Virus record (IMG/VR): IMGVR_UViG_3300019776_000324
Span: 186,001-250,000 of that record
Direction: 5' to 3' (one strand)
Length of the DNA: 64,000 nt
The notes under the pieces are model-generated. The model saw nothing but the letters and a program-made list of their open reading frames with translations, had not been told where the DNA came from and made no database searches. A program made the translations under genes and the position numbers. This document shows, one piece after another, positions 236-18,209 of the stretch. Position 1 is the stretch's first letter. Each line of letters opens with the position of its first letter.

Positions 236-298
236 TACTGTGGGTGCCGATGGTCGGGCCCACAGTATTATGTCACTTGCTTAATAAAGGAGAAAACA
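236..298 (+). promoter_or_regulatory. Structured 5' leader of hsp20: hairpin plus ROSE-like anti-SD element
   Basis: Stem TACTGTGGG(236-244)/CCCACAGTA(259-267) encloses GCCGATGGTCGG; then CTTGCT-taataa-AGGAG (UYGCU opposite the SD). Second copy at 18155-18209. Confidence 0.7.
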
Positions 299-742
299 AT
301 GACAAGACTTACAACTCTGGACCTCAGTCCATTCTATCGCAACTCAATCGGTGTAGACAAATTATTTGATCGTTTGCTTGGTCAAATTGATGCTGGCGGA
401 ACTACACAGAACTATCCACCATACAATATTGTAAAAACTGGCGACAACACCTACGAGATTCAAGTAGCTGTTGCTGGCTTTACGCAGGGTGAAGTTACTG
501 TAAATGTTAACGAAGGTAATTTGATTATCACTGGTGAGAAATTATCTAAAGAATTGCCAGAAGGTCATGTGTATGAGCATCAGGGCATCAGCGCCCGTCG
601 TTTTATGCACACATTTACCTTGGCTGACTATGTAGAAGTAACTAGCGCACTAAGCAAGGACGGTATTCTTACTGTCAAGCTAGAACGCCAAGTTCCTGAA
701 GCAATGAAGCCTAAAACTATTGCGATATCATACGAATCGTAA
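299..742 (+). CDS. Small heat shock protein (Hsp20/IbpA family)
   Basis: NYPPYNI, AVAGF, HQGISARRF, DGILTVKL and C-terminal I-x-I motifs; AGGAG SD. Confidence 0.95.
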   Translation: MTRLTTLDLSPFYRNSIGVDKLFDRLLGQIDAGGTTQNYPPYNIVKTGDNTYEIQVAVAGFTQGEVTVNVNEGNLIITGEKLSKELPEGHVYEHQGISARRFMHTFTLADYVEVTSALSKDGILTVKLERQVPEAMKPKTIAISYES

Positions 743-804
743 TATAATATAGTAAATACAGTGGAGGGCATACTGCTCTCCACTATAATAACAAAGGAAC
801 TTGT

Positions 805-1113
805 ATGTCACAAGCTGGAACAGTTACAAAAATAGAAGTTAATCAAATTCTTAAAGAACCTCCAATGTTTAAGGTGATCTATCTTAACGATAATCAAACC
901 AGTATGGAATTTGTAATTGAAACTCTATTAGACTTTTTTAATTATACTCCAGACACCGCAGTAAAAATTACCCAAGATATCCACGAACAAGGATCAGCAG
1001 TGGTAGCAGTATTGCCATATGAAGTTGCTGAACAAAAAGGCATCGAAGTAACAGTAAGTGCCCGCAGTCAAAATTATCCACTACAAGTTAAACTAGAGCC
1101 AGAATCGGCTTAA
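805..1113 (+). CDS. clpS: ATP-dependent Clp protease adaptor ClpS
   Basis: EPPMFKVIYLNDNQTSMEFV...IHEQGSAVV..YEVAEQK...YPL. Confidence 0.95.
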   Translation: MSQAGTVTKIEVNQILKEPPMFKVIYLNDNQTSMEFVIETLLDFFNYTPDTAVKITQDIHEQGSAVVAVLPYEVAEQKGIEVTVSARSQNYPLQVKLEPESA

Positions 1114-1234
1114 CAGAACAGTCCGGTCAAGCCTATGGGGTAGGAATACCTTATGCTCACTTTGATATAGCTAGAATTTACTAGTGAACTCTCGGGACGC
1201 CGAGTGCTACGGGCATCATGAGGGCGATAAGCCT

Positions 1235-2020
1235 TCACCTAATTTCAATACGCTTGGGATAATACGCCAGTTGAGAATACTCAGTGTCCCCACGACCTCG
1301 GCAGTTGTTTGTAAATCTAACTCCTGCAAAGTCACGGTCAACACTTTTATGATAGTGCCCAAAGCACCAAGTTTTAATTTTGTTTTCAGTATCTTCATCC
1401 AGCACTGACAACAAATGTCGATTGCCCATGCAATTAAATCTCCAGGTATCAACTAGTTCTAAATCATGATCTATAATCCATGATGCTGGCAGAGTATGAG
1501 TTACAATTATTATTGAATGTACATCTGGATGTGTTTGTAATCTAGCAACACTATTAATTAAATATACAGCATCATGATAAGCCACACCATTTATATTATT
1601 TGCTGCGGATAGAGTAATGTCATTCCTTTGTTGATACCATTCGATGGTTTGCGCAACTTCGATATTTGGATCAAAATCATAACACCACCATCCATTTGTG
1701 GCCAAGATAGCAACGCCATTGACAATAACTACATTGTCTTGCATGTAAACAACATTTGGAATATTACTAACTTGCTGAACTAACTCTTGATAGCTTGCTC
1801 CAAGATCTTCTAAAGTATAACGATGCTCATCGTTGCCATCAATATAAAATACAGCGGCATAGCATTGTCCTAAATGAGTTAGTACATCAACAAGAACACT
1901 GCGGTCTCTACACACATCTCCGGCCACGACACAATATGGGCTGGTAGCTTGTCCAGTCCAGTCGAACTCATCCCAGGTTTCGATGTGTAGGTCAGAAATT
2001 AAATCAAAGGCAAAAGTCAT
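1235..2020 (-). CDS. Calcineurin-like metallophosphoesterase
   Basis: DLH, GD, GNDEH, H and GHYH metal-binding motifs. Confidence 0.85.
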   Translation of the reverse strand: MTFAFDLISDLHIETWDEFDWTGQATSPYCVVAGDVCRDRSVLVDVLTHLGQCYAAVFYIDGNDEHRYTLEDLGASYQELVQQVSNIPNVVYMQDNVVIVNGVAILATNGWWCYDFDPNIEVAQTIEWYQQRNDITLSAANNINGVAYHDAVYLINSVARLQTHPDVHSIIIVTHTLPASWIIDHDLELVDTWRFNCMGNRHLLSVLDEDTENKIKTWCFGHYHKSVDRDFAGVRFTNNCRGRGDTEYSQLAYYPKRIEIR

Positions 2021-2045
2021 GATAACTATTTACAGGAGATTGACA

Positions 2046-2399
2046 ATGAACATAATTTTTGGTGACAATATAGCAGCACTTGAAGACAAGTACACAGTAT
2101 TAGAGTTAGATACCTTTCGTATCGGATCAGATGGTCCAGTTAATACTGCTTATTGTGTTTTGGAACTTATTCCCCTTGAAGAAATGGCTCTAGCTGAAAG
2201 TATGGTAGATTTACATCATAATCTTATGCAGGAGTACAAGAAGCGCAATTGGAACTATTGCGAGCAAGCCATGGAACAACTTATGGGCAAATGGAACGGC
2301 GAACTGGATACTTTTTATCAAGAACTAGAAAAACGCATCGGCAAGCTAAAAACCCTGGAGTTAACCAACGAATGGTCTCCTATAATTGAAAAAGTCTAA
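2046..2399 (+). CDS. Stand-alone paralogue of the C-terminal region of the adenylate cyclase at 5485-7533
   Basis: AGGAG SD before ATG 2046; aligns by eye with the last ~120 aa of the cyclase (e.g. LMGKWNGELDTFY vs LIGKFGGQMDKYY). Confidence 0.7.
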   Translation: MNIIFGDNIAALEDKYTVLELDTFRIGSDGPVNTAYCVLELIPLEEMALAESMVDLHHNLMQEYKKRNWNYCEQAMEQLMGKWNGELDTFYQELEKRIGKLKTLELTNEWSPIIEKV

Positions 2400-2424
2400 A
2401 AACCCTTAGTAATACCACTTAATT

Positions 2425-2462
2425 TCTTGCTCTAGATCCTATAAATATCAATAGGAGCGAGA
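2425..2462 (+). promoter_or_regulatory. T4-type late promoter TATAAATA (2440-2447) inside a hairpin that sequesters the csgF SD
   Basis: TCCTAT(2437-42)/ATAGGA(2451-56) and TCTTGCTC/GAGCGAGA arms flank TATAAATA. Confidence 0.65.
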
Positions 2463-2464
2463 GT

Positions 2465-2917
2465 ATGATAATAATAATAAGATTTACTCTGCTATGTATA
2501 ATTGCGATCTCCTTACAAGCCGTCGCAGTGTCAGCAGAACTGATTCATCAGTTTAACAGCCCCGCCTTCAGCGGAATTGGCTGGTCCAGTCATGTGCTAA
2601 CCATTGAGCAGATGGAAGCCGCACGGGCTCAAAAAATCAAAGACGAAAACAAGGCTGCGCAAGATAAAGCTGAGCGCGACGCTAAAAACACTAACTTGGC
2701 TAAGTTTTTAGTCAATGTGGAAAGTCGTATCTATGCACAATTATCCAAGCAACTAGCAGATGCCATGTTCAGTGATGGCGGAAATAGTGGTAACATGGAC
2801 TTTCAAGGTACAAATATCAATTGGGTTAAAACCGCAACTGATGTTACATTAACAATTACGGAAGCTGGCGGCGGTGTAACGCAGATAACAGTTCCGTTGG
2901 CGAGCTTTGCATTCTAA
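2465..2917 (+). CDS. csgF: Curli assembly protein CsgF-like
   Basis: Signal peptide, then AELIHQFNSPAFSG (cf. CsgF N-terminal FxFxNPxFGG); SRIYAQLSKQL; immediately upstream of csgG. Confidence 0.8.
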   Translation: MIIIIRFTLLCIIAISLQAVAVSAELIHQFNSPAFSGIGWSSHVLTIEQMEAARAQKIKDENKAAQDKAERDAKNTNLAKFLVNVESRIYAQLSKQLADAMFSDGGNSGNMDFQGTNINWVKTATDVTLTITEAGGGVTQITVPLASFAF

Positions 2918-3699
2918 TGAAACGGCTTGCTATACTCTTCTGCACACTAGCCCTCTCAGGTTGCGCTAATCTTCACATGATGGCCGCACAGGAAGAACCT
3001 GTGGTCGTTCAACCCAAAGAAAATTTAATGGCCAAACTACCTACACTAGAAGGCCCACCAATGACTGTAGCAGTGTATGGGTTCAAAGACCTAACTGGAC
3101 AAATGAAACCCAACGACAAACTAGCAGTATTCAGTAAGGCTGTTACGCAAGGTGCAGAAGTATTTTTAATTAAGAGTCTACAAGATTCTAGAGGATGGTT
3201 TAGAGTTGTTGAGCGTGTTGGACTTGACAACCTAATTAAAGAGCGTCAACTTATACGCAATCAGCGTGAAGTGTACGAAGGTAAAGATGCCAAAGCATTA
3301 AAGCCACTAACTGTGGCAGGTGTCTTGATTGAGGGCGGAGTTATTGGCTATGACAGCAATATACGCTCAGGTGGTAACGGTGCCAGATTTTTAGGCATCG
3401 GAGGCAGTCAACAATACAGAGTAGATGAAGTTACAGTTAGTCTTAGACTAATCAGTATTGCATCCGGCGAAGTATTGTTAACCAACGCTGTAAGTAAAAC
3501 CATTTACTCTACAGCACATGATGTAGGTGTACTAAAGTTTGTAGATAATGCAACCAAAGCATTGGAAATTGAAACTGGCACCGCATTAAATGAGCCCACG
3601 ACTTATGCAGTTCGTGTGGCCATTGAGCAGTCAGTTTACGAAATGATAGTAGACGGACAACGAAAGGGTCTTTGGAATTTTGTCCAAAGCAAAAACTAA
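2917..3699 (+). CDS. csgG: Curli secretion channel CsgG (outer-membrane lipoprotein)
   Basis: Lipobox LSGC; VAVYGFKDLTGQ, FSKAVTQG, WFRVVERVGLDNLIKERQLIR, IEGGVIGYDSNIRSGGNGARFLGIG, NEP motifs. Confidence 0.95.
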   Translation: MKRLAILFCTLALSGCANLHMMAAQEEPVVVQPKENLMAKLPTLEGPPMTVAVYGFKDLTGQMKPNDKLAVFSKAVTQGAEVFLIKSLQDSRGWFRVVERVGLDNLIKERQLIRNQREVYEGKDAKALKPLTVAGVLIEGGVIGYDSNIRSGGNGARFLGIGGSQQYRVDEVTVSLRLISIASGEVLLTNAVSKTIYSTAHDVGVLKFVDNATKALEIETGTALNEPTTYAVRVAIEQSVYEMIVDGQRKGLWNFVQSKN

Positions 3700-3700
3700 A

Positions 3701-4321
3701 ATGAAATCAAGTATGACAAGCGTTTGTAAGTTGCTGAGTAAATTACTTACTGTAGTAGGAATCGTAGCCATGGGTAGTGCGATGGCCAATGAAGTTTATG
3801 TCGAGCAAGTAGGCAGTGGATCTACAATTAACATATTACAAGAAGGTTCTGATAATAGAATTGGCACAAGTTTATCGCCAGCCTATATTGGGTCTGGATC
3901 TAATACAGTTAATATTGATCAAATTGGTGCCAACAATACCTTAGACATGGTGGTTAATGGATCATCAACAGATGTTACAGTATCAACCACTGGTAGTAAT
4001 AACACTCAAGAGATTCAGTGCGGTACGACTGGGTCATCTGGTTGCGGTGGTAGTGTAATTACTCAAACCATTACAGGAGATAACAATACTGTACGACAAC
4101 TGCTAGGTGCTGGTGCCAATCATACCAGTAATATTGCAGTAACAGGTGATACCAATACTGTTACTCATACTAGTACTGCCACAGGCACAACCTCGGCAGA
4201 TATTACTGTAACAGGAAACACTAATACAGTAGCAGTTACTCAATCAGGAATGTTGAATCATAGTGTCACGGTTAATAGTAGCGGTAACCTTAATAACATT
4301 AGCATTATTCAGCGAGACTAG
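3701..4321 (+). CDS. Secreted curlin-like (CsgA/CsgB-type) beta-solenoid repeat protein
   Basis: Signal peptide ending AMA-NE; repeated (Q/T)-x-G-x-x-N strands rich in G/S/N/T/Q; lies directly after csgG. Confidence 0.75.
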   Translation: MKSSMTSVCKLLSKLLTVVGIVAMGSAMANEVYVEQVGSGSTINILQEGSDNRIGTSLSPAYIGSGSNTVNIDQIGANNTLDMVVNGSSTDVTVSTTGSNNTQEIQCGTTGSSGCGGSVITQTITGDNNTVRQLLGAGANHTSNIAVTGDTNTVTHTSTATGTTSADITVTGNTNTVAVTQSGMLNHSVTVNSSGNLNNISIIQRD

Positions 4322-5348
4322 TATATCAGCGGTAGGGAAAGTTACAGAACAAACTGGCCCTACCGAGATAGTTAGAAACAAAAAGTCCTCGCCGAGTGCG
4401 GTTAATGCGCCAGTCGAAATGAACGACACTATCATTACGGCCAAGGCAAAGGCAAAATTAACATTTGAAGATAACACCACAATAAACATTACAGAACAAA
4501 GTAAAGTATTGATTGATGACTTTGTTTATGATCCAAAGAACAAAGATGCTGGCAAACTGTCAATGAAGATGGTACAAGGTACAGCTCGATATGCGTCAGG
4601 ACAGATTGCTAAAAACAATCCTCAGGCAGTAAACATACAAACACCCACAGCTACAGTAGCAGTGCGTGGCACAGATTTCTCAATGACAGTAGATGAACTA
4701 GGTCGTAGTCTTGTTATGTTGTTACCAAGTTGCGATAAGAAAGGTTGTGTTACTGGAGCAATTAGTGTGAGTAATGAAGCTGGTACAGTATTTCTTGATG
4801 TGGCATTTCAGGCCACATTAGTTACTAGTATTTCAGTACCGCCACAGGCACCAGTAATAGTAACTATTGATACTGCTAACATTAATAACTTGTTGATTGT
4901 TAGCCCTCCTAAGGAAGTAGTTAAAGACACAAATGAAAACTCTCAGAAAACTGCACTTGATATAAACTTCTTAAACAAAGATCTACTCAAGTACAATGAA
5001 TTAGATAAAAACGAATTGGAAAAATTTAGATCCTTGGACATTAACTTTTTAGATGTAGACTTATTGGTAAACCTATTAGACCTAAGCACTGCACAACTAT
5101 CAGCCAGTCAAGAACAACTGTCTAACGAAGCTTCGTTGTTACCAAAGTATTCGCCAGCTTCTGGAATAACTTACTATTTTAGTGATGACGAAAGTAAAGT
5201 AATTCTTCGTAAAGTTACCACACATATTGCAGAAGTTACTGTACCTGTAGACCACGATGTTGTAATTAATATCACGCAGGATGGTACAGCAGTAACACAG
5301 CAAGTCAATCGCGGTGGAACATCAGTTATCAATATCATTCAGCGTTAG
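4263..5348 (+). CDS. Exported FecR-domain protein
   Basis: Signal peptide; VGKVTE..G, DTIIT, LTFEDNTTINITEQSKVLIDDFVYDP, TPTATVAVRGTDF motifs. Confidence 0.85.
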   Translation: MSRLIVAVTLITLALFSETSISAVGKVTEQTGPTEIVRNKKSSPSAVNAPVEMNDTIITAKAKAKLTFEDNTTINITEQSKVLIDDFVYDPKNKDAGKLSMKMVQGTARYASGQIAKNNPQAVNIQTPTATVAVRGTDFSMTVDELGRSLVMLLPSCDKKGCVTGAISVSNEAGTVFLDVAFQATLVTSISVPPQAPVIVTIDTANINNLLIVSPPKEVVKDTNENSQKTALDINFLNKDLLKYNELDKNELEKFRSLDINFLDVDLLVNLLDLSTAQLSASQEQLSNEASLLPKYSPASGITYYFSDDESKVILRKVTTHIAEVTVPVDHDVVINITQDGTAVTQQVNRGGTSVINIIQR

Positions 5349-5441
5349 CTCCTGAGTAAGTATGCCGTTTATATTTTACGATTAATTCTTAAATAGAATG
5401 CAGGCATTATAACTAAAACAAGCCGGCTACGAAGGATTTTT

Positions 5442-5472
5442 AAGTACCCACTTTATTGTGGGTATTTTTTTC
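5442..5472 (+). terminator. Intrinsic terminator after the FecR gene
   Basis: TACCCAC-tttatt-GTGGGTA followed by a T-tract. Confidence 0.65.
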
Positions 5473-5484
5473 ATTAAATACTCT

Positions 5485-7533
5485 ATGCTTAAAAAAATAA
5501 TAACAAGTCCTTGGACAGCATTACTAACATTGGCACTAGTAGTTGGATTGCGTGTAGCAGATCCTACTTTTGTTGAAAGCGTTCGTCTGCGCTACTTTGA
5601 CACACTAGTAACTAGTAAACCTGCAGAGGTCATTGGAGTTAGTGTTGTAAACATAGACGAGAAAGCCTTAGAAAAATATGGTCAATTCCCTTTCAGTCGC
5701 GATATCTACGCTTCCGTTATTCGAGAACTTTATCGTCGTAACGCTGGTCTGGTGGTTTTTAATATTCTTACTCCTGATCGCGATCGTATGGGTCAGGATC
5801 AATCTTATATCCAAGCACTCAGACAGTTCCCAACCATCCTACCTAGTATTGGATCTACACAAACAAGAAACCAACCAAGAAACCCAGGAACGATTATAAT
5901 TGGACCATACCAAAATCAAATAGTTACATATCCTGGAATTATTGCCAACATACCTGCTGTTGAAAATGCAGCTGCTGGAGTTGGAATTGTAAACACTTTT
6001 CCAGAAGTTGACGGAGTAGTAAGACGCATGCCGTTGGTAGTAATGAGCGATCAAAAACTTTATCCTGGTATGGCCATGGAAGTGTTGCGTGTAGCAGCAG
6101 GAGACTCGACATTCCAGGTTAAACTAAACGAGAATGGTGTAGAGAAAATGCGCATTCCAAAGTTTGGACCTATTGCTACTGATAGTTTAAGTCGTATTTG
6201 GATTGACTGGAGTTTGGTTCCGGACAAGTATAGTTTAACCAATCTGCCAGATGATTTTGAAGGTGAAATAGTTATTGTGGGTGTGTCAGCCCAAGGATTA
6301 AGTAATCCAGTAGCAACAAGCATGGGTGAAATGCTACCACAAGATTTACAAGCAGCAGTATTAGGCACAGTAATAGCAAATAAAGATCGACCTGCTATCA
6401 CTCGCCCAGATTGGGCCGATGGCGCTGAAATTATATTTGTGTTAGTGGCAGGTATTTTATTATTATTTTTATCAAGGTGGGTTTATGTTGGACTTTGTGC
6501 ATCTGTTGTTATACTCGGCGGGAGTTTACTATTTTCTAGTTGGGCTTATGGAAGTCTCGCTTGGCTTGTGGACGCAACTGTTCCGGTCGCTGGTCTTGTC
6601 ATTGTGCTTCTTCATGCTTATGGTGTTAAGTTTGTAAGTGAGTTCTTACAGAAGCAAGCGATCAAGAAACAGTTTGCTGGCTACTGCTCTAAAGAAGTTG
6701 TGGATATGTTGCAGAAGGATCCAGACTTGATCAAGCGTGGTGTGCGTAAGGATGTAAGTGTTATGTTTAGTGACCTGCGTGGCTTTACTCCTATTGGTGA
6801 ACACTACGGTGATGATGTTGCTGGACTTGGCAAGTACATGAACGGCTATATGGATGCTATTAGTCAGCCTATCATGGACAACAAAGGCATGGTTATCAAG
6901 TATGTAGGAGATGCAAGTATGCATATTCACGGTGCTCCTATTGAAGATCCTAATCACGCAAGAACAATCGTTGCTGTCGGTCTACAAATGTTAGATGCTG
7001 TAGACGAGTACACTAAGCTAATGGAAGCACAAGGCTTACCTCCTGCGGCAATGGGCTGGGGTTGTAACTCGGGCATTGGCTTTATTGGCGAAATGGGAAG
7101 CACAGATAGACACAGCTATGACATTTTAGGTGATATGGTTAGTACGGCGGCACGATTAGAAGCTCGTTGCAAAGCATATGGTGTACTATGTATTATTGGT
7201 GCTGAAACTTACAATCGTACCAAAGATGATTTCTTCTACCTGTTGTTAGATAACTTACAACCAAAAGGTAAAACTGTGGCAGACTTGATCTACACAGTAT
7301 TACGCACCAAAGGCGCAGACTACACCAAAGAACTATCAACACATAACAAGATGCATGCATTATACAAAGAGAAAAATTTTGATGCGGCCGCTATCTTATG
7401 TGGAGAATTAATTGGTAAGTTTGGCGGACAAATGGACAAGTACTATAAGATTTGGATCGAGCGTTGCGAGTTTATGAAAGAACAGAACTTACCAGAAAAC
7501 TGGAATGGTGAATTTGTAGCGCACGAAAAATAA
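5485..7533 (+). CDS. CHASE2-domain membrane-bound class III adenylate/guanylate cyclase
   Basis: N-terminal TM; CHASE2 (IDEKALEKYGQFPFSR, DGVVRRMPL); three TMs; cyclase motifs MFSDLRGFT, KYVGDA, GEMGS, YDILGDMVSTAARLE. Start placed at ATG 5485 (ORF track 5458). Confidence 0.92.
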   Translation: MLKKIITSPWTALLTLALVVGLRVADPTFVESVRLRYFDTLVTSKPAEVIGVSVVNIDEKALEKYGQFPFSRDIYASVIRELYRRNAGLVVFNILTPDRDRMGQDQSYIQALRQFPTILPSIGSTQTRNQPRNPGTIIIGPYQNQIVTYPGIIANIPAVENAAAGVGIVNTFPEVDGVVRRMPLVVMSDQKLYPGMAMEVLRVAAGDSTFQVKLNENGVEKMRIPKFGPIATDSLSRIWIDWSLVPDKYSLTNLPDDFEGEIVIVGVSAQGLSNPVATSMGEMLPQDLQAAVLGTVIANKDRPAITRPDWADGAEIIFVLVAGILLLFLSRWVYVGLCASVVILGGSLLFSSWAYGSLAWLVDATVPVAGLVIVLLHAYGVKFVSEFLQKQAIKKQFAGYCSKEVVDMLQKDPDLIKRGVRKDVSVMFSDLRGFTPIGEHYGDDVAGLGKYMNGYMDAISQPIMDNKGMVIKYVGDASMHIHGAPIEDPNHARTIVAVGLQMLDAVDEYTKLMEAQGLPPAAMGWGCNSGIGFIGEMGSTDRHSYDILGDMVSTAARLEARCKAYGVLCIIGAETYNRTKDDFFYLLLDNLQPKGKTVADLIYTVLRTKGADYTKELSTHNKMHALYKEKNFDAAAILCGELIGKFGGQMDKYYKIWIERCEFMKEQNLPENWNGEFVAHEK

Positions 7534-7534
7534 T

Positions 7535-7948: not shown

Positions 7949-7956
7949 ACTTTTAC

Positions 7957-8253: not shown

Positions 8254-8254
8254 T

Positions 8255-8449: not shown

Positions 8450-8548
8450 GCTAACAACCCTACAATAACTCCAGCAACAAACGCTATCAGCGCAAACTTG
8501 GCCAAATCCCAATCGGTCCAAATTTGTTTAATGGGTAATGCATAAGGA

Positions 8549-10527: not shown

Positions 10528-10566
10528 ATATCGTTATTTAATAAAAAGAATCCCCTGGAACTAAAA

Positions 10567-11091
10567 ATGTCAACGCAATACACGCACAAATATCAACTTT
10601 ATCCATTTTGGGATGATGAGTACAAAAAATTAAACTATATTACAGAACCATTTAACGATCCTGTAAATGTTAGTCTTTGGTTAGGGCAAGGATATCCTCC
10701 TAACTTTGTTGGTGAGTTGTGTGACATGCGCCACCAATTACCTGCATGGAGTCGTAGATTTATAGAAATTTTTGAAGGTCAAGGCTGGAAGGATGTGGGC
10801 ATTGCCTTTTACCGTATGCACACAGGAACAGTGTTGCCCAACCATGTGGACTTGTATAAACGATATATTGAATTATTTAAACTTGAAGGCCAAGAAAAAA
10901 CTATTCGTCGTGCATTGGTACTACTTGAAGATTGGAAGTCTGGTCATTACCTGGAAATAAATGGCAGTCCTGTGGTCAATTGGCGAGCAGGTCAAGTGGT
11001 AGAGTGGGTATATGATACTCCACACATGGCAGCAAACATTGGATTAGAAGATAGATACACATTACAAATTACAGGGCACATTGATGATTAA
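10567..11091 (+). CDS. 2OG-Fe(II) dioxygenase / cupin hydroxylase-like
   Basis: HxD (NHVD), distal His (PHMAAN) and R-x-x-x-Q-I-T strand. Confidence 0.7.
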   Translation: MSTQYTHKYQLYPFWDDEYKKLNYITEPFNDPVNVSLWLGQGYPPNFVGELCDMRHQLPAWSRRFIEIFEGQGWKDVGIAFYRMHTGTVLPNHVDLYKRYIELFKLEGQEKTIRRALVLLEDWKSGHYLEINGSPVVNWRAGQVVEWVYDTPHMAANIGLEDRYTLQITGHIDD

Positions 11092-12007: not shown

Positions 12008-13274
12008 TCCTAATGCTATAACACGCATGATTGAAGACCAAATTACTAAAACAGTTAATGAGCAGATATTAACTGTAATGAGTTCTGACCAATGGTTAGA
12101 AAGTCTTGAGCAAAAAATACTACAGTACACTCAAGATCGTATATTGAGCAAATTTGCTAATGCATCAACTATGCCAGAAATTGTTAGTGCAGTCAAAGAC
12201 AGTGTCAGCAAATTGTTTGATGAAGGAAAAATACCCGGAGTAGAAGAGTTTGTTAACCCTGCGGTTATTAAGTCAACAATTGATCAAGCAGTTGAACAAT
12301 ATACACAAGCATCCGTTGAGCAATTTGGCCAAGATCCAAGATGGCAAGCCAGAGTTGAAGCACAAATCAATCAAGCTATCACGCAAAATACATTAGCAGT
12401 ACTAGGGTCTATTGATCTTAACCCAATTATCAAACAACGGGTTGATGACAATATGACCGTGTTCCGTCAAGACATATTAAAAGAGTTTGCAAGCACTGGT
12501 ATTAGCGATCAAGCCTCTGCATGTCAGTTAACTGTGATGGACGATACTGTGGTAGTAGAGAATTGCTTGACTGCACACAGTATAAATGTTGTAGAATCTG
12601 CTACCATACAAAATTTAGTAGTCAAAGGATCAATCAACACTGATAATTTTGCTTGGTCGCAACTGTCTGCAGATATCAGTCAAAAAACCCTGGATAGTTT
12701 AACAACAGAATGGCAAGGAAACTTGGTTAAACAAGTAGCTGATCATATTGTTGAAAACGGTATTGATTTTAAACAAGTCACGGTTGATGGCATAAAGTTA
12801 ATTGACGGTAATCGTTTATCAAGATCAATTACACAAACAAATATACAGTCATTGGGAGTGTTGGACACTTTATCAGTAACTGGAGAAGCACAGATTGGTG
12901 CTGCAAACATTCTAAAAACTCGTGTAGGAATCAACACTGATCTGCCAGACATGGCATTAAGTGTATGGGATGAAGAAGTATCAGTCAGCATTGGTAAATT
13001 TAAAAGCGATCAGGCCTTTGTGGGCACCAGCAGATTGCAAGGATTGGTTATAGGAGTAAATCGCCAGCCACAAATTGAAATTACTTCAGACGGGTTGACT
13101 CGAATTAAAAAACTTCAATTAGGCCTACATAAAGTTAGTTTTGAACCAGCAGTGCCAGGCTGGTCCGGTACTCGTGGCGACATGGTGTTTAATTCTAATC
13201 CAGGAGCAGATCGTGTGTTTGCCTGGGTATGCTTGGGCGCATTTAAATGGCAACCACTTAAGAGTGCAGAATGA
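12000..13274 (+). CDS. Hypothetical protein, possibly virion-associated (helical N-half, beta-rich C-half)
   Basis: TQTNIQSLGVLDTLSVTG resembles the fibre repeat; C-terminal GDMVFNSNP..WVC...W. Confidence 0.5.
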   Translation: MLDPNAITRMIEDQITKTVNEQILTVMSSDQWLESLEQKILQYTQDRILSKFANASTMPEIVSAVKDSVSKLFDEGKIPGVEEFVNPAVIKSTIDQAVEQYTQASVEQFGQDPRWQARVEAQINQAITQNTLAVLGSIDLNPIIKQRVDDNMTVFRQDILKEFASTGISDQASACQLTVMDDTVVVENCLTAHSINVVESATIQNLVVKGSINTDNFAWSQLSADISQKTLDSLTTEWQGNLVKQVADHIVENGIDFKQVTVDGIKLIDGNRLSRSITQTNIQSLGVLDTLSVTGEAQIGAANILKTRVGINTDLPDMALSVWDEEVSVSIGKFKSDQAFVGTSRLQGLVIGVNRQPQIEITSDGLTRIKKLQLGLHKVSFEPAVPGWSGTRGDMVFNSNPGADRVFAWVCLGAFKWQPLKSAE

Positions 13275-13822
13275 ATGTAAGCTGGGTATTATCTGATTCA
13301 GTAGTGCTAGATCCAACTCTGGATGTCACTCCACTCAAAAATATTGGAAGTTTCTGGGGATCGTGGTCTACTTGGCGTAGTTGCCAAACTGACAATGTAA
13401 TATGCAATGATCCTGTCAAAGCCGCAGAACTAATTAAACGAGAGTTTCAAAAAACTTGTAATTTTTATATTTCAAATTCAATATTTCAACAGTTAGGACG
13501 ACCAGAAGGAGTTAGACTCTACGGTGGTGCGTTCGAACATGATGTAGATCATCAAGACGACATTGTAGCCATGCATCTAGTTACTGGTACCAGCGATATA
13601 GTGCTACTGTTGGGATTTGATTTGACTGATCATGCACCAAACCCAGATAGATTAGAACAGCATCGTCGAATGAATTACAGAGGATTGATTCGGCAAGCAA
13701 TAACAGATAATGAGCATATACAATGGGTACTAGTAGACCATCCAGGAGAAATTGGTAAAGACATGATTTTGGATAATCTTACCAAAGACTCCATGTCTAG
13801 TGTGTTGAAATTACTAGATTGA
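13271..13822 (+). CDS. Hypothetical protein
   Basis: 183-aa coupled ORF; IVLLLGFD motif. Confidence 0.6.
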   Translation: MNVSWVLSDSVVLDPTLDVTPLKNIGSFWGSWSTWRSCQTDNVICNDPVKAAELIKREFQKTCNFYISNSIFQQLGRPEGVRLYGGAFEHDVDHQDDIVAMHLVTGTSDIVLLLGFDLTDHAPNPDRLEQHRRMNYRGLIRQAITDNEHIQWVLVDHPGEIGKDMILDNLTKDSMSSVLKLLD

Positions 13823-13854
13823 CAAAATAAGTCATTTAGTTGTATAATAGCTGT

Positions 13855-14883
13855 ATGACTACAACTACAGCTCCTCGTATTGGTTTTGCTTGCAAATGGA
13901 TCGATGAACCCAGCCAGGTCAACGGCATTAAGCCCAAAGATCCAGCAAAAGCATATAACACTGGATCAACCACAGTGCGCTGGCTAAACAACCAAACTCG
14001 AGATGTAGCCGAACAAAAGTTGTGGGACTTAATGGTTCAAAATATTGAATCGACCCGTAAACTAGTAGAAAGAGTAGGTACATTAAATGATAATCTTAGA
14101 ATGGTCCGCCTTAGCAGTGATCTCTTGCCTGTCTATACTCATGACGATTGGAAGTATTTTTGGCGCCGTGAAGATGTTAGACAGTACGCAGAAACTCACT
14201 TTGAACAAGTGGGTAACTTGGCAAGGTCATCTAATACTCGTCTCAGTTTCCATCCTGGGCAATTTACTGTGTTGGCATCTGATAACCCGGGCATTGTTGA
14301 CCGTTCAATAGAGGAGTTTGAGTATCATGCAGATATGGTCCGTTGGATGGGTTTCGGAAAAGAATTCCAAGATTATAAGATTAACGTACACATCTCAGGC
14401 CGTCAAGGGCCAGAAGGTATCAGAGCCGCCTACAAGAGATTGTCACCTGAGGCTCGTAACTGCATCACCATCGAAAACGAGGAAATAACACATGGGCTCC
14501 AACATACTCTTATGCTTTCTGATATTGTTCCTACTGTCTTGGACATTCATCATCACTGGGTCCGCGAGGGCGAATACATACACCCCAGAAGCGACAATTG
14601 TAAAAGAGTTATTGACAGTTGGAGGGGTACTCGTCCTACTATTCATTATGCTCTTAGTCGTGAAGATTATCTTGTCGGACATGATGCGACCTGTGCCCCC
14701 GACCATAAAGCACTTCTCGAATCCGGGCATAGTAAGCAAAAACTAAGAGCGCATTCGGACTTCTATTGGAATCATGCTACTAATGAATGGGCATTGAGTT
14801 TCTTAGAAGATTTTGATATTATGTGCGAGTCTAAGGGCAAGAATCTTGCTAGTCGTGCATTATATGAGCAATGGAAAAAGTAG
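13855..14883 (+). CDS. uvsE: UV-damage endonuclease (UvsE/UVDE)
   Basis: RIGFACK, RLSSDLLP, RLSFHPGQF, INVHISG, ITIENEE, LDIHHHW, AHSD, DIMCESKGK; TTGACA/TATAAT promoter at 13819-13848. Confidence 0.93.
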   Translation: MTTTTAPRIGFACKWIDEPSQVNGIKPKDPAKAYNTGSTTVRWLNNQTRDVAEQKLWDLMVQNIESTRKLVERVGTLNDNLRMVRLSSDLLPVYTHDDWKYFWRREDVRQYAETHFEQVGNLARSSNTRLSFHPGQFTVLASDNPGIVDRSIEEFEYHADMVRWMGFGKEFQDYKINVHISGRQGPEGIRAAYKRLSPEARNCITIENEEITHGLQHTLMLSDIVPTVLDIHHHWVREGEYIHPRSDNCKRVIDSWRGTRPTIHYALSREDYLVGHDATCAPDHKALLESGHSKQKLRAHSDFYWNHATNEWALSFLEDFDIMCESKGKNLASRALYEQWKK

Positions 14884-15098
14884 ACTATCAAGATCCACCG
14901 CCTAATTGGACAAGTATTATAATATTGTGGAACGATATTCTTTCTGGTCCTGACTATCGTATTAGAGATATATTAGAGTGGATAGATGATGCTCCCGGTG
15001 GCCGATATCACTTACACGGACACCAGTTTGACAAAGGATTTGATTTTAGATTTGAACGCCCAGAAGATGCAACATATTTTAAATTAAGGTGGTTATAG
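14871..15098 (+). CDS. Small protein of a paralogous family ending F-x-F-x4-DA-x2-F-x-L-x-W
   Basis: Shares its C-terminal pattern with 41409-41654 and 42034-42270. Confidence 0.6.
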   Translation: MEKVDYQDPPPNWTSIIILWNDILSGPDYRIRDILEWIDDAPGGRYHLHGHQFDKGFDFRFERPEDATYFKLRWL

Positions 15099-15388
15099 TG
15101 GAATGGATTACAAACAGTTGGCAGTATGTTAAACAAGATTGGGCAAGTAATCGAGTTAGATTCTGCGCAGAAGTATTTGCGTGGTCGTGTAGTGTAACTA
15201 GTGCTGTAATCTTTGCCGTTACAGTTCCAGATATTCCTGTAGTGCCGCTTTACAGTATTTTTATTGCTGGATGTTGTGCTAGTGCCTGGGCTTGTTGGAC
15301 TAGACGGAGTTTTGGATTGCTCGCCAACTCCGCCTTCCTAGTTACTATTGATAGTATAGGATTAATCCGGTATTTCTTACAGCATTAA
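15089..15388 (+). CDS. Small integral membrane protein (3 TM)
   Basis: Three hydrophobic segments. Confidence 0.6.
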   Translation: MVIVEWITNSWQYVKQDWASNRVRFCAEVFAWSCSVTSAVIFAVTVPDIPVVPLYSIFIAGCCASAWACWTRRSFGLLANSAFLVTIDSIGLIRYFLQH

Positions 15389-15594
15389 ACCTTAGGAGCT
15401 TTAGGTTTACGGGCAGTTTTGGCCTTTACACCGGGTTTCTTTTCACCTTGGATTTTTGCTGGACGAGTAGTAGCCTTCTTAACAGTAGGTTTTTTAACTT
15501 CTACTGGTTGCTCCACCTTGGGTGCTTCCACCTTGTATGGTGCTGGTGTTTCTGCTGGTTTAGAGCCAAAAAGTTTCTTAAAAAATTCTAACAT
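15385..15594 (-). CDS. Lys/Pro/Ala-rich basic protein
   Basis: MLEFFKKLFG amphipathic start after AGGAG SD; histone-H1-like low-complexity tail. Confidence 0.6.
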   Translation of the reverse strand: MLEFFKKLFGSKPAETPAPYKVEAPKVEQPVEVKKPTVKKATTRPAKIQGEKKPGVKAKTARKPKAPKV

Positions 15595-15787
15595 AATAAT
15601 CTCCTTATGCATGTATTTAACCGTTTTAATCATTAACGGTTAATATTATTATTGCATTGCCGCAATATATACTATATACTACTAGTGAAAACCATGAGAG
15701 AAAATACTATGCCAAAACATGAACGAATTGCTTTATTGCTATTGTTGGCAATACTAGCAGTCATGCTGGTAACCATTTAAGATTATT

Positions 15788-15934
15788 ATGACAAAAATTA
15801 TAGAACAATTTATGCACTTATTTGCCAAGGATGCAAGTGCCCTAGAACAATTCCTAAACTCACGCAATTTAAAAACCCATGCAGATGTAGAGTTTTGGAC
15901 ACGCTATTTTGAAAATAAAGGAAAAGTATTATGA
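15788..15934 (+). CDS. 48-aa protein, DUF3563-like (not in the ORF track)
   Basis: MTKIIEQFMHLFAKDASALEQFLNSRNLKTHADVEFWTRYFENKGKVL*; coupled to a 46-aa ORF at 15931-16071. Confidence 0.5.
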   Translation: MTKIIEQFMHLFAKDASALEQFLNSRNLKTHADVEFWTRYFENKGKVL

Positions 15935-16070
15935 AAATTATCAACGCAATTGTAAGTTTTATTCAAAGCATACGCGAAGCAAACTATGCAGCAAATTTAG
16001 CCCGTAACGGCAAAATTAAAGAATCTCAGTCTTGCTACGCTGATGCCAAAGGTATTTGTAGAGGTCTATA

Positions 16071-16625
16071 ATGATCATTACAGAATTTTTACCCGTTCAA
16101 CACTATAAACAGTTTGGCGATTGGCTAGAAATTCAAGACGAAGAAACTCGTCAACTGTACTTTGGTGTAGCTGGTAGTCAACATGTGATCAACGCACTAA
16201 TGGATCGTGTACTAGCGAACCCAGACGATCATTATTTTTTAGTGGCCAAAGACGGTGCTCGTTGGGTTGGTACTATTCATATCGCTGTCAGCAACACAGT
16301 AGTAGAATTTGGTGTGATTGTTGACGAAGAATATCGTGGACAAGGAGTTGCTAATATCTTAATGGATGAAGCTCTTATTTGGGCCCGAAATCGTGGCTAT
16401 AAAGAATTGTTTATGCATTGTTTAGGTTGGAACAAGCCTATACAGCATTTGTGCCACAAGCATGGGCTGGAAACTCACAACATGTATGGTGATAGCGAAG
16501 TCGAGATAAAGTTAGACCCAGCTAATTGGATTACTATCAACAAAGAAATCTGCATAAAACAACGCAACTTGTTCCACACATTCTTGCAGAATAATAGCAT
16601 GTTATATCGTGAGATGTACGGTTAA
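16071..16625 (+). CDS. GNAT family N-acetyltransferase
   Basis: VEFGVIVDEEYRGQGVANILM acetyl-CoA motif A. Confidence 0.85.
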   Translation: MIITEFLPVQHYKQFGDWLEIQDEETRQLYFGVAGSQHVINALMDRVLANPDDHYFLVAKDGARWVGTIHIAVSNTVVEFGVIVDEEYRGQGVANILMDEALIWARNRGYKELFMHCLGWNKPIQHLCHKHGLETHNMYGDSEVEIKLDPANWITINKEICIKQRNLFHTFLQNNSMLYREMYG

Positions 16626-16632
16626 ATACTAG

Positions 16633-17337
16633 ATGACTACAATCATAGCAACCCTGGTAATGGTCCAACTTACCATAGCGTGTGTGACACTATATTTGCA
16701 CCGCGGAGTATGTCACCGAGCTGTTTCATATAATCCTGTGGTAGAACATGTCATGCGCTTTTGGCTTTGGTTAACAACCGGCATGGTTACTAAACAATGG
16801 GTAGCAATACATCGCAAGCATCATCAACGGTCAGACCAAGAAGGTGACCCACATAGCCCACAAATCTACGGCATCAAGCGTGTGTTGTTTGGTGGTGCAT
16901 TTTTATATCATGCGGCCAGCAAAGACAAGGCCATGGTTGAAAAGCTAGGAGTAGGCACACCCGACGACTGGATTGAACGGAACCTTTACACTCCACACAG
17001 CAGACTTGGCATTAGTATTATGCTTATCATTGATCTATGCTTGTTTGGCCTATGGGGCTGGTTAGTCTGGGGCATTCAAATGATTTGGGTTCCATTCTGG
17101 GCTGCTGGTGTAATCAACGGTCTAGGGCATTGGGTTGGATATCGCAACACTGATACCGCAGATACCAGTCGTAATTTAATTCCTATAGCTGTATGGATTG
17201 GTGGTGAAGAGTTGCATAATGGGCATCACGCAGATGGTGCCAATGCCAAGTTCAGTACCAAATGGTGGGAGTTTGATATTGGCTGGATGTATATTACAAT
17301 TCTTAAAAAATTAGGGCTGGCTCAAGTTCGTCAATAA
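16633..17337 (+). CDS. Membrane fatty-acid (acyl-CoA/lipid delta-9-type) desaturase
   Basis: His boxes LHRGVCH, HRKHH, HNGHH; DPHSP; WWEFDIGW. Confidence 0.93.
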   Translation: MTTIIATLVMVQLTIACVTLYLHRGVCHRAVSYNPVVEHVMRFWLWLTTGMVTKQWVAIHRKHHQRSDQEGDPHSPQIYGIKRVLFGGAFLYHAASKDKAMVEKLGVGTPDDWIERNLYTPHSRLGISIMLIIDLCLFGLWGWLVWGIQMIWVPFWAAGVINGLGHWVGYRNTDTADTSRNLIPIAVWIGGEELHNGHHADGANAKFSTKWWEFDIGWMYITILKKLGLAQVRQ

Positions 17338-17345
17338 GTATTTTG

Positions 17346-18086
17346 ATGAAAATTGTGCTGGTCACCGGTGGGTTTGACCCTGTCCATTCTGGACATATTT
17401 CTTATTTTAAAGCAGCTCGCACCATGGGCGACATGTTGATCGTTGGACTCAACAGCGACGAATGGCTTGAGCGTAAAAAGGGTCGTGCATTTATGCCCTG
17501 GAATGAAAGATTATGTGTTATTAATAATCTCTCCATGGTTGATGAAGTGTTTACTTTCAACGACGAAGATGGCACAGCCAAGCATTTTATTCAACAGGTC
17601 AGAGCACACTATCCTGAAGCTGATTTGATATTTGCCAATGGTGGAGATCGCACAGCAACAAATATTCCAGAAATGGATTGTGCTGATAAAAATTTATATT
17701 TTGCATTTGGAGTTGGTGGCGAAAATAAATCTAATAGTTCAAGTTGGATCTTGCAAGAGTGGAAAGCACCTAAAACAGAACGCCCGTGGGGACATTATCG
17801 TGTACTGCATGAAGCGCCTGGCATGAAAGTCAAAGAGCTCACAGTAGAACCTGGAAAAAGTTTAAGCATGCAACGACATGCTCAACGCAGAGAATACTGG
17901 GTAGTAGAAGAAGGCAACTGCAAGGTTGAAACAGATACCAGTACATTGTTGTTGGATACACATCAAACTATAGATATTCCAGTGGGTTCGTGGCACCGTT
18001 TAAGCAACCCATTTACTAACCCTTGTAGAATTGTGGAAATACAGTATGGCACAGCCTGCGAAGAATCGGACATAGAGCGTAAGTAA
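17346..18086 (+). CDS. Cytidylyltransferase-like (HIGH) domain fused to a mannose-6-P isomerase type II cupin
   Basis: TGGFDPVHSGH, GLNSD, FANGGDR; then ERPWG..., LSMQRH, WHRLSNP, IVEIQYG. Confidence 0.85.
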   Translation: MKIVLVTGGFDPVHSGHISYFKAARTMGDMLIVGLNSDEWLERKKGRAFMPWNERLCVINNLSMVDEVFTFNDEDGTAKHFIQQVRAHYPEADLIFANGGDRTATNIPEMDCADKNLYFAFGVGGENKSNSSSWILQEWKAPKTERPWGHYRVLHEAPGMKVKELTVEPGKSLSMQRHAQRREYWVVEEGNCKVETDTSTLLLDTHQTIDIPVGSWHRLSNPFTNPCRIVEIQYGTACEESDIERK

Positions 18087-18101
18087 TTTCACCAAAAAGA
18101 C

Positions 18102-18130
18102 TTGCAAAATGTTGCAGTGCAATATATAAT
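18102..18130 (+). promoter_or_regulatory. Sigma70 promoter with a palindromic PhaR-like operator in the spacer
   Basis: TTGCAA-17-TATAAT; TTGCA-G-TGCAA palindrome at 18112-18122. Confidence 0.6.
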
Positions 18131-18154
18131 AGATAAATAAGTTAGAGAAAACAA

Positions 18155-18209
18155 GTTAGTGCCGATGGTCGGGCTAACGCAGAAGCTCGCTTAATTTAGG
18201 AGATTTACC
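18155..18209 (+). promoter_or_regulatory. Second copy of the hsp20-type structured leader
   Basis: GTTAG/CTAAC stem around TGCCGATGGTCGGG; CTCGCT-taattt-AGGAG. Confidence 0.7.

What the first reader, a model, noticed from the sequence alone, without database searches (positions are those of the whole stretch)
236..18209. Same leader RNA, with covarying stem and ROSE-like anti-SD, upstream of two unrelated genes (hsp20 and a phasin-like ORF)
Seen: the identical 16-mer GTGCCGATGGTCGGGC occurs at 244-259 and 18159-18174. Each copy is closed by a different but complementary outer stem (TACTGTGGG/CCCACAGTA vs GTTAG/CTAAC), which is covariation. Each is followed by CT(T/C)GCTTAAT-x-x-AGGAG. Known: U(U/C)GCU pairing to the SD is the hallmark of ROSE RNA thermometers ahead of small heat-shock genes. 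Inference: a phage post-transcriptional regulon, thermometer- or protein-controlled, co-regulates a chaperone and a granule-type protein. The invariant hairpin looks like a protein-binding site.
Basis: partly seen in the sequence, partly recalled or inferred. Interest (0 to 1): 0.75.

Follow-up and report, generated by a model that had tools for sequence, protein, structure and literature searches.

The report
Phage heat-shock-type RNA leader (ROSE-like)
A giant freshwater phage carries three copies of a short RNA leader resembling the bacterial ROSE "RNA thermometer", and related leaders sit before the small heat-shock gene of the seven cultured phages tested, where they have not been annotated.

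Summary
The exact 16-mer, the different complementary outer stems and the CT(T/C)GCTTAATnnAGGAG tail are at the stated coordinates.

The window lies in a 344-kb phage genome with terminal repeats. Both sites align over the full length of Rfam ROSE_3 (30.7 and 19.9 bits). This is the short two-hairpin ROSE type. Both scores fall below the family cut-off of 43 bits.

The "invariant" 16-mer matches the conserved top of ROSE_3 hairpin I. Hairpin II pairs CU(U/C)GCU with AGGAG and leaves a G bulged.

A third copy lies 1.85 kb upstream of the window. It precedes a conserved 8-codon ORF ahead of groES-groEL.

In 70 distinct phage leaders, 11 of 12 hairpin I pairs show compensatory changes. Leaders recognised by the same model precede hsp20 in Methylophilales, Pelagibacter and Sinorhizobium phages and in cyanophages. 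In relatives of this phage it also precedes dnaK and diverged versions of the 82-aa helical protein.

Most likely these are translational gates that occlude the ribosome-binding site. Temperature response is inferred, not shown. "Phasin-like" and "protein-binding hairpin" remain unproven.

I class it as a new member of a known kind, with moderate to high interest.

The parts
1..210 (+). 3' end of groEL (context). The gene starts upstream of the window.
   Evidence: Cpn60 Pfam match on the upstream part in L003. Stop codon at 208-210.
222..304 (+). Leader copy 1, ROSE-like, between groEL and hsp20.
   Evidence: Model R1 scores 85.1 bits. Rfam ROSE_3 aligns 238-304 at 30.7 bits, full length, below the 43-bit cut-off.
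236..267 (+). Hairpin I of copy 1. Outer stem 236-244 pairs with 259-267. The conserved top is U-G(bulge)-CCGA / UCGGG with loop UGG.
   Evidence: Fold gives -22.8 kcal/mol, z -4.3. Covariation in the family.
276..292 (+). Hairpin II of copy 1. Anti-SD CUUGCU at 276-281 with bulged G279, opposite SD AGGAG at 288-292. GUCA at 272-275 can also pair with UGAC at 300-303 over the start codon.
   Evidence: Sequence. ROSE_3 alignment. Fold.
299..742 (+). hsp20, an IbpA-type small heat-shock protein of 147 aa.
   Evidence: PF00011 at 6.9e-18. IbpA/IbpB NCBIfam matches and phrog_432.
805..1113 (+). clpS (context: a cluster of protein-quality-control genes).
   Evidence: PF02617 at 2.4e-24.
18102..18130 (+). 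Sigma-70-type promoter of the orf82 unit (TTGCAA, 17 nt, TATAAT). The spacer holds the palindrome TTGCA-G-TGCAA at 18112-18122.
   Evidence: Promoter scan, 10 of 12 matches. Equivalent promoters in orthologous loci.
18136..18215 (+). Leader copy 2, ROSE-like.
   Evidence: Model R1 scores 57.5 bits. ROSE_3 aligns 18153-18215 at 19.9 bits; ROSE_2 scores 17.3 bits.
18155..18178 (+). Hairpin I of copy 2. Outer stem GUUAG/CUAAC with the same conserved top.
   Evidence: Fold. Covariation.
18186..18202 (+). Hairpin II of copy 2. Anti-SD CUCGCU at 18186-18191 with bulged G18189, opposite SD AGGAG at 18198-18202.
   Evidence: Minimum-energy structure at 4-25 C. Predicted unpaired fraction of the SD rises from 0.02 at 4 C to 0.46 at 37 C. 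Second most occluded of 54 AGGAG sites in the genome.
18210..18458 (+). orf82, a small all-helical protein found mainly on phage-type contigs. Function unknown.
   Evidence: 524 metagenomic homologues, none with a functional name. Only 13 cluster representatives. AlphaFold2 helical hairpin, pLDDT 88. Weak Phasin_2 signal.
18476..18498 (+). Terminator-like GC-rich hairpin that ends the orf82 unit.
   Evidence: Terminator scan reports it on the minus strand; it is palindromic. Sequence.

Best explanation
The two sites are copies of one cis-acting mRNA leader. A third copy lies at G000:C1:184073-184150, 1.85 kb upstream of the window. The leader resembles, and is probably homologous to, the short two-hairpin ROSE-like RNA thermometers (Rfam ROSE_3, the type described for Pseudomonas ibpA).

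Transcription: host-type sigma-70 promoters start transcription a few bases before hairpin I. The hsp20 copy has only a degenerate promoter, so that leader is probably intercistronic on the groES-groEL-hsp20 transcript.

Hairpin I is a stable stem. Its lower part covaries freely. Its top, (U/C)-G(bulge)-C-C ... G-G-G, is almost invariant. It probably aids folding or protects the mRNA.

Hairpin II pairs CU(U/C)GCU with the AGGAG ribosome-binding site, leaving one G bulged. This weak helix should hide the ribosome-binding site in the cold and open as temperature rises.

The effect would be to gate translation of Hsp20, of the 82-aa helical protein and of an 8-codon ORF ahead of groES. In relatives it would also gate DnaK.

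Shown: sequence, structure, covariation, family resemblance and distribution. Inferred: occlusion of the ribosome-binding site in vivo, and temperature as the signal.
For: - Full-length ROSE_3 alignments. For the whole genome: 33.7 bits (E 5e-6) and 30.7 bits (E 2.9e-5). Copy 2: 19.9 bits. The ROSE_3 consensus hairpin I reads GAUGCCGAAgUCGGGUC, which matches the 16-mer.
- Structure-blind MAFFT alignment of 56 leaders: 10 of 12 hairpin I pairs carry compensatory changes, and 86.9% of cells are paired against 35-54% when partners are slid.
- Model-guided alignment of 70 distinct leaders: 11 of 12 pairs compensatory. Hairpin II is 96% paired, with U.G to C-G changes.
- U.G is the main closing pair of the inner stem (55 of 70). 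That fits RNA on the + strand, not DNA.
- The bulged G of hairpin II is present in 68 of 70 leaders.
- Natural variants keep the ribosome-binding site occluded by other means: CUUCGUUU, and GUCCU...AGGAG in L005.
- The genome has exactly three hits to model R1, all just before start codons.
- The leader precedes hsp20 in nearly all of 80 IMG/VR phage loci. It also precedes hsp20 in seven isolated phages that were not used to build the model.
- Predicted accessibility of the ribosome-binding site rises with temperature. Copy 2 and the third copy rank 2nd and 3rd most occluded of 54 AGGAG sites.
- The Pseudomonas precedent has been tested experimentally (PMC3669281).
Against: - No experimental or transcript-level data. 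The RNA-library contigs found prove nothing.
- All phage leaders score below the ROSE_3 cut-off: 19.9-39.9 bits against 43.
- Hairpin II shows no two-sided covariation, because the ribosome-binding site is fixed.
- For the hsp20 copy, predicted hairpin II is very weak: -0.6 kcal/mol at 37 C and -4.2 at 4 C. Its occlusion is only median, rank 33 of 54.
- Promoters are sigma-70-like, not sigma-32-like as in Pseudomonas.
- Heat shock is not an obvious cue for a freshwater phage.
- The near-invariant top of hairpin I hints at an additional sequence-specific partner.
Confidence: 0.62

Rival explanations
1. Chaperone-titration feedback. The leader, possibly through the invariant top of hairpin I, is bound by oligomers of the phage's own IbpA-type Hsp20, which repress translation. 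When Hsp20 is drawn off to aggregating proteins, for example during mass production of virion proteins, all leader-bearing genes are de-repressed. This could act together with thermosensing.
For: - E. coli, Cedecea and Vibrio IbpA bind their own ROSE-type 5' UTR and repress translation. This needs R93, plus R97, K98 and Y34 (PMC10474464, PMC10410725).
- The phage Hsp20 keeps the Tyr and the irreplaceable Arg at the aligned positions. Relatives also keep R97.
- The leader travels with hsp20 among phages of very different hosts. Any specific trans factor must therefore be universal or encoded by the cassette itself.
- The hairpin I top is conserved in sequence well beyond what the structure needs.
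Against: - The window's Hsp20 has His at the R97 position and Thr at the K98 position. Alanine substitutions at either position abolish repression in E. coli (PMC10474464).
- The part of the UTR that IbpA recognises is not known.
- The Hsp20-orf82 complex prediction gave no answer and did not address RNA.
Confidence: 0.25
2. No regulation. Hairpin I merely protects the mRNA 5' end, or marks a processing site in the groEL-hsp20 spacer. The CUUGCUU...AGGAG stretch is just a conserved strong ribosome-binding region inherited with the gene.
For: - Hairpin I sits at the predicted transcript 5' end in most loci.
- A stabilising role was proposed for the Pseudomonas hairpin I (PMC3669281).
- Hairpin II of the hsp20 copy is predicted to be barely stable.
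Against: - The anti-SD with its bulged G is conserved in 68-70 of 70 leaders.
- Where that sequence is lost, another SD-complementary stretch replaces it.
- The same cassette has been recruited to unrelated genes.
Confidence: 0.1
3. A DNA-level element: an operator for a dimeric repressor at +1 to +30, or an intrinsic terminator of groEL at site 1.
For: The inverted repeat lies just downstream of the promoters. Site 1 follows the groEL stop codon by 26 nt.
Against: - The lower stem covaries freely, which suits RNA pairing rather than protein-DNA recognition.
- U.G wobble pairs and a one-sided bulge dominate.
- No T-run follows the stem, and the terminator scan found none in 1-1300.
Confidence: 0.03

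Closest known systems
Short two-hairpin ROSE-like RNA thermometers of Pseudomonas ibpA (Krajewski et al. 2013, PMC3669281). I equate these with Rfam ROSE_3 (RF02523) by inference from the shared two-hairpin consensus.
   Same: About 60-nt leader directly before an IbpA-type gene. Stable GC-rich hairpin I with the same conserved top (UGCC...GGG). A 3' hairpin in which U(U/C)GCU pairs imperfectly with the SD. Start codon close behind.
   Different: Phage-borne. Sigma-70-type promoters instead of sigma-32. Hairpin II is shorter and more AU-rich. Scores fall below the Rfam cut-off. Also used before non-sHsp genes: dnaK, an 80-90-aa helical protein and an 8-codon ORF.
E. coli ibpA/ibpB leaders (ROSE_2 type) with IbpA self-repression (PMC10474464, PMC10410725)
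   Same: ROSE-type anti-SD. One sHsp controlling several mRNAs through similar leaders is a precedent for a small post-transcriptional regulon.
   Different: The E. coli leaders are longer, with several hairpins, and score only 15-17 bits with the phage model. RNA binding by the phage Hsp20 is untested.
Previously reported phage RNA thermometers: lambda cIII, SPbeta blyA (fourU) and a gut Caudoviricetes sigma-70 gene (fourU), as listed in PMC11182007
   Same: Phage-encoded 5' leaders that gate translation by temperature.
   Different: Different structural classes and different target genes. None is ROSE-like or precedes a chaperone gene.
ROSE-like elements upstream of bacterial ABC transporter genes (PMC11342760; abstract seen only)
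   Same: Shows that ROSE-like leaders can serve genes other than small heat-shock genes.
   Different: Bacterial. The targets are unrelated to those found here.

Membership tests
ROSE-like RNA thermometer, short two-hairpin type (Rfam ROSE_3) | U(U/C)GCU anti-SD paired with the SD in the 3'-proximal hairpin | tested here: met
   CUUGCU 276-281 opposite AGGAG 288-292. CUCGCU 18186-18191 opposite AGGAG 18198-18202. 96% of cells paired in 70 leaders.
ROSE-like RNA thermometer, short two-hairpin type (Rfam ROSE_3) | Unpaired (bulged) G inside the anti-SD strand | tested here: met
   G279 and G18189 are unpaired in the ROSE_3 alignments and in the folds. G is present in 68 of 70 leaders.
ROSE-like RNA thermometer, short two-hairpin type (Rfam ROSE_3) | Stable, conserved 5' hairpin I | tested here: met
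   -22.8 and -10.3 kcal/mol. 11 of 12 pairs covary. Same top sequence as the ROSE_3 consensus.
ROSE-like RNA thermometer, short two-hairpin type (Rfam ROSE_3) | Score at or above Rfam's gathering threshold (43 bits) | tested here: not met
   33.7, 30.7 and 19.9 bits in this genome. 33-39.9 bits in other phage leaders.
ROSE-like RNA thermometer, short two-hairpin type (Rfam ROSE_3) | Position in the 5' UTR of a small heat-shock gene | tested here: met
   Met for copy 1 (hsp20). Copy 2 and the third copy precede other ORFs.
ROSE-like RNA thermometer, short two-hairpin type (Rfam ROSE_3) | Temperature-dependent melting of hairpin II and release of translation | not testable with these tools
   Energy-model predictions only. 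Clear for copy 2 and the third copy, weak for the hsp20 copy.
Pseudomonas-type ibpA control system | Sigma-32 promoter upstream of the thermometer | tested here: not met
   TTGCAA-17-TATAAT at 18102-18130. TTGACA-17-TATAAA(T) at the third copy and in most phage loci.
Phasin (Pfam Phasin_2 PF09361, TIGR01841), considered for orf82 | Profile match at or above the curated cut-off | tested here: not met
   orf82 itself has no hit. The best family member scores 17.9 bits against a 24.9-bit cut-off. 3 of 24 members hit at E below 0.1 in Pfam, and 1 of 24 in TIGR01841.
Phasin (Pfam Phasin_2 PF09361, TIGR01841), considered for orf82 | Long amphipathic helices; association with storage granules | tested here: inconclusive
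   The AlphaFold2 model is a helical hairpin, which is not specific. Fold searches gave no significant match. Granule association could not be tested.
IbpA-type sHsp with mRNA-binding self-repression | Arg at E. coli position 93 and an aromatic residue at position 34 | tested here: met
   Alignments A4 and A5. The Arg is invariant and the Tyr is present.
IbpA-type sHsp with mRNA-binding self-repression | Cationic residues at positions 97 and 98 | tested here: not met
   The window protein has His and Thr there. Relatives have Arg and Thr.
Intrinsic terminator, considered for the hairpin after groEL | GC-rich stem followed by a U-run | tested here: not met
   No terminator-like site in 1-1300. 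The stem is followed by UAUUAUGUCAC.

The most novel reading that the evidence does not exclude
The leader is a portable, self-contained proteostasis sensor. The invariant top of hairpin I is the docking site for the phage's own IbpA-type Hsp20. Hsp20 represses every leader-bearing mRNA until it is titrated away by aggregating proteins.

Phages have copied this cassette onto dnaK and onto a phage-specific helical protein. Through an 8-codon ORF, they may also have linked it to groES-groEL. A ribosome terminating on that ORF would uncover an ACUCC anti-SD that otherwise pairs with the groES ribosome-binding site.

The result would be a virus-encoded, sigma-32-independent mini heat-shock regulon.
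Probability: 0.2. Interest if true: 0.8.

Novelty: new member of a known kind. Interest (0 to 1): 0.6.

Why it matters
A 2024 paper (PMC11182007) counts only three RNA thermometers in phage genomes, and none of them is ROSE-like. In the searchable library I found no paper that links phage hsp20 to a thermometer.

Here ROSE-like leaders turn up before hsp20 in nearly all of 80 metagenomic phage loci. They also turn up in cultured phages of OM43, SAR11, Sinorhizobium and marine Synechococcus. They go unannotated because every copy scores under the Rfam cut-off.

This gives three things:
- A concrete handle on how phages time or condition expression of their own chaperones.
- Several cultured phage-host systems in which to test it.
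- A natural example of one small RNA cassette being re-used to build a post-transcriptional regulon in a virus.

It also points to an unknown 80-90-aa helical protein family as a likely partner of the chaperone set. A covariance model built from these leaders would let annotation pipelines find them.

Tried and rejected
- Rfam at gathering threshold over the whole window: no hit. The signal appears only in E-value mode.
- tRNA scan of the window: none.
- Near-match to the 16-mer at 50610: lies in what reads as coding sequence, with no ribosome-binding site. Judged chance.
- Terminator reading of the site 1 hairpin: no T-run.
- Bacterial origin or host: the 80 closest bacterial Hsp20 loci are at most 51% identical, and only 2 gave weak hits to the phage model. 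No donor or host could be named.
- ROSE_3 in 5 and then 121 sampled Pseudomonadales genomes: 0 and 1 sub-threshold hits. The tool's pre-filter scores few candidates per genome, so this says little.
- orf82 function: PHROGs, NCBIfam, PDB profile search, AFDB cluster search and Atlas fold search were all uninformative.
- Hsp20-orf82 complex. The job with the window's own proteins returned 'no answer'. It is not evidence either way.
- Public reads: only short Logan contigs, some from RNA libraries, cover 240-450. They give no transcript ends.
- Long-range pairing of the groES SD with ACUCC after the mini-ORF: predicted with pair probability of at least 0.43 in 6 of 8 sequences (at least 0.87 in 4), but without covariation. 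Kept only as an idea.


Full report
**Where the window lies.** It is G000:C1:186001-250000 of a 344,244-bp IMG/VR virus record with direct terminal repeats and 40.5% G+C. Words from the first 1.2 kb occur mainly in freshwater and aquatic metagenomes.

The start of the window belongs to a cluster of protein-quality-control genes. In order these are a ClpX-like AAA+ ATPase, ribosomal protein S21, GroES, GroEL (ending at 208-210), Hsp20 (299-742) and ClpS (805-1113).

**The observation.** The 16-mer is exact at 244-259 and 18159-18174 and occurs nowhere else in the genome.
- Each copy is closed by a different complementary stem. Both fold into a hairpin with one bulged G and a three-base loop.
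- Each is followed by CT(T/C)GCTTAATnnAGGAG and an ATG 7-8 nt later. That tail occurs only at these two places in the genome.
- A repeated 16-mer alone is not remarkable in 64 kb. About 0.5 are expected by chance, and 22 repeated stretches of 16 nt or more exist in the window. The combination of features and the comparative data make the case.

**What it resembles.** Rfam finds nothing at gathering threshold. In E-value mode both sites align end to end with ROSE_3 (RF02523):
- 238-304: 30.7 bits;
- 18153-18215: 19.9 bits. ROSE_2 also matches this site, at 17.3 bits.

The ROSE_3 consensus for hairpin I reads GAUGCCGAAgUCGGGUC. The second hairpin of the consensus, CUcGCuGA...UCaGgAG, corresponds to CUUGCUUAAUAAAGGAG and CUCGCUUAAUUUAGGAG.

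The pairing is C-G, U-A, U.G or C-G, a bulged G, then C-G and U-A. This matches the published description of short ROSE-like thermometers before Pseudomonas ibpA. There, hairpin I is stable and does not melt, while hairpin II melts and frees the ribosome-binding site (PMC3669281).

**A third copy.** Searching the whole genome with ROSE_3 found its best hit just outside the window, at G000:C1:184089-184150 (33.7 bits, E 5e-6). The hsp20 copy was second, at E 2.9e-5.

That copy has these parts in order:
- a TTGACA-17-TATAAA promoter;
- hairpin I (GUAGAUGCCAAUUGGGUCUAC);
- CUUGCUUAU...AAGGAG;
- an 8-codon ORF (MSKHTYLT);
- a second sigma-70-type promoter;
- groES and groEL.

**Comparative evidence.**
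- Eight IMG/VR orthologues of orf82 all carry the leader.
- Nearly all of 80 phage hsp20 loci carry it, usually right after a TTGACA-17-TATAAAT promoter.
- A structure-blind MAFFT alignment of 56 leaders gives compensatory changes in 10 of 12 hairpin I pairs. 86.9% of cells are paired, against 35-54% when partners are slid.
- With a covariance model (R1) and 70 distinct sequences, 11 of 12 pairs covary and hairpin II is 96% paired.
- The closing pair of the inner stem is mostly U.G, which fits RNA on the + strand.
- The lower stem varies freely. The top is almost fixed: bulged G in 67 of 70, C-C in 66 and 70 of 70, and G-G-G in 65-70 of 70.
- Hairpin II varies only as U.G to C-G. Two natural variants occlude the ribosome-binding site differently: CUUCGUUU, and GUCCU...AGGAG in L005.

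**Extent of the regulon.** R1 finds exactly three hits in this genome. In related phage genomes it precedes the following:
- hsp20;
- the mini-ORF before groES. The ORF keeps 8 codons, MSK(H/Q)(T/I)(Y/F)(L/V)T, in 8 distinct sequences;
- a full dnaK in G005 and G014;
- small helical proteins of 74-91 aa at promoters of similar design. One of these is 33% identical to orf82.

**Isolated phages.** None of these was used to build R1. Scores before hsp20 were:

| Phage | R1 bits |
|---|---|
| Methylophilales phage Melnitz-3 | 62.8 |
| Pelagibacter phage Mosig | 42.1 |
| Sinorhizobium phage Phosso | 33.7 |
| Pelagibacter phage HTVC115P | 32.9 |
| Cyanophage Syn33 | 32.1 |
| Cyanophage S-RSM4 | 29.3 |
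| Pelagibacter phage HTVC008M | 28.2 |

E. coli ibpA and ibpB leaders score only 15-17 bits. Every phage leader tested scores below ROSE_3's 43-bit cut-off, with a best of 39.9. This explains why the leaders are not annotated.

**Energetics.** These are predictions only.
- For copy 2 and the third copy, the ROSE-type hairpin II is the minimum-energy fold at 4-25 C. The unpaired fraction of the ribosome-binding site rises from 0.02 at 4 C to 0.46 and 0.32 at 37 C.
- These two copies rank 2nd and 3rd most occluded of 54 AGGAG sites in the genome at 10 C.
- The hsp20 copy is weak: -4.2 kcal/mol at 4 C, -0.6 at 37 C, rank 33 of 54. Its fold can add GUCA:UGAC pairing across the start codon.

**orf82.**
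- It has 524 metagenomic homologues, none with a functional name, some on contigs of about 300 kb.
- Only 13 cluster representatives exist among 1.8 billion proteins.
- Nearly all of its nearest Atlas clusters are viral.
- AlphaFold2 predicts a helical hairpin with pLDDT 88. Fold searches are uninformative.
- Phasin_2 is the most frequent weak Pfam hit: 3 of 24 members, best 17.9 bits against a 24.9-bit cut-off. "Phasin-like" is a lead, not a finding.

**Mechanism and rivals.** I consider a ROSE-type gate that occludes the ribosome-binding site the most likely reading (0.62).

The main rival, which could also act alongside it, follows the finding that IbpA binds its own ROSE-type UTR through R93 (PMC10474464, PMC10410725). 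The phage Hsp20 keeps that Arg and the Tyr aligned to Y34. It has His and Thr at positions 97 and 98, whereas relatives have Arg at 97.

The leader moves with hsp20 among phages of unrelated hosts, and the top of hairpin I is conserved in sequence. An Hsp20-titration loop is therefore plausible, but untested.

Readings at the DNA level (operator or terminator) are disfavoured by the wobble pairs, the free covariation and the missing T-run.

**Novelty.** A 2024 paper lists only lambda cIII, SPbeta blyA and one gut-phage sigma-70 gene as phage thermometers (PMC11182007). No paper in the searchable library combines cyanophage, hsp20 and thermometer. The library lacks most subscription journals, so an earlier report cannot be excluded.

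The element is a new, phage-wide member of a known class, with an unusual spread to non-sHsp genes.

Noticed in passing
G000:C1:184073-184300, about 1.7-1.9 kb upstream of window base 1; locus L003:1485-1712: Third copy of the leader, followed by a conserved 8-codon ORF (MSKHTYLT). Next come a small palindrome UGAC-CUAGC-GUCA holding the stop codon, an ACUCCC stretch, a second sigma-70 promoter and groES. In this genome's predicted fold, ACUCC pairs with the groES SD GGAGU. The pair probability is at least 0.43 in 6 of 8 related sequences (at least 0.87 in 4). Either a ribosome-dependent relay to groES or a remnant of a deleted gene.
   Followed up: partly
window 18112-18122: Palindrome TTGCA-G-TGCAA in the spacer of the orf82 promoter. 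Orthologous promoters keep a palindrome there with different arms (TGCG-GT-CGCA, GGCA-AT-GCCA). It is the only such motif before a -10 box in the genome. Possibly an operator.
   Followed up: partly
window 24234-24269, 53130-53165 and 53872-53907 (extending to 53129-53168 and 53871-53910): A 36-40-nt identical promoter-like repeat: AAACGGTTGACCCGAAATGCCCAATTTGCTATAATA, that is TTGACC, 17 nt, TATAAT. A looser copy lies near 43020. It looks like a family of strong phage promoters.
   Followed up: no
window 26238-31669: Many short direct repeats (17-49 nt) of the type ATATTACCTGTGG.../CACCTGTGATGTTGCC..., at offsets from 66 nt to about 8 kb. Probably repeated modules inside one or more large coding regions.
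   Followed up: no
window 299-742, residues 100-105 of Hsp20: The window's Hsp20 has His where E. coli IbpA has R97. Most relatives in the alignment have Arg there. All the phage proteins aligned have Thr or Ser at the K98 position.
   Followed up: partly
L005:1438-1506 and L012:1438-1506: Two orf82 orthologues keep hairpin I but have replaced the CUCGCU anti-SD. In L005, GUCCU pairs with AGGAG in the predicted fold. L012 has a similar C-rich replacement whose pairing is less clear. A natural swap consistent with SD occlusion as the selected function.
   Followed up: yes
L016, L017, L022, L208:538-621, L209:4797-4879: Variant hsp20 leaders read CUUCGUUU instead of CUUGCUU. By inspection, this would move the bulged G by one position while keeping the pairing to AAAGGAG.
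   Followed up: partly
G000:C1:~174110 (+), outside the window: An 87-aa ORF whose AGGAG is predicted to be almost completely paired at both 10 and 37 C. It is the most occluded of 54 such sites. Not looked at further.
   Followed up: no
L003:33-1243, upstream of the window: The phage encodes a ClpX-like AAA+ ATPase and ribosomal protein S21 directly upstream of the chaperone cluster.
   Followed up: partly
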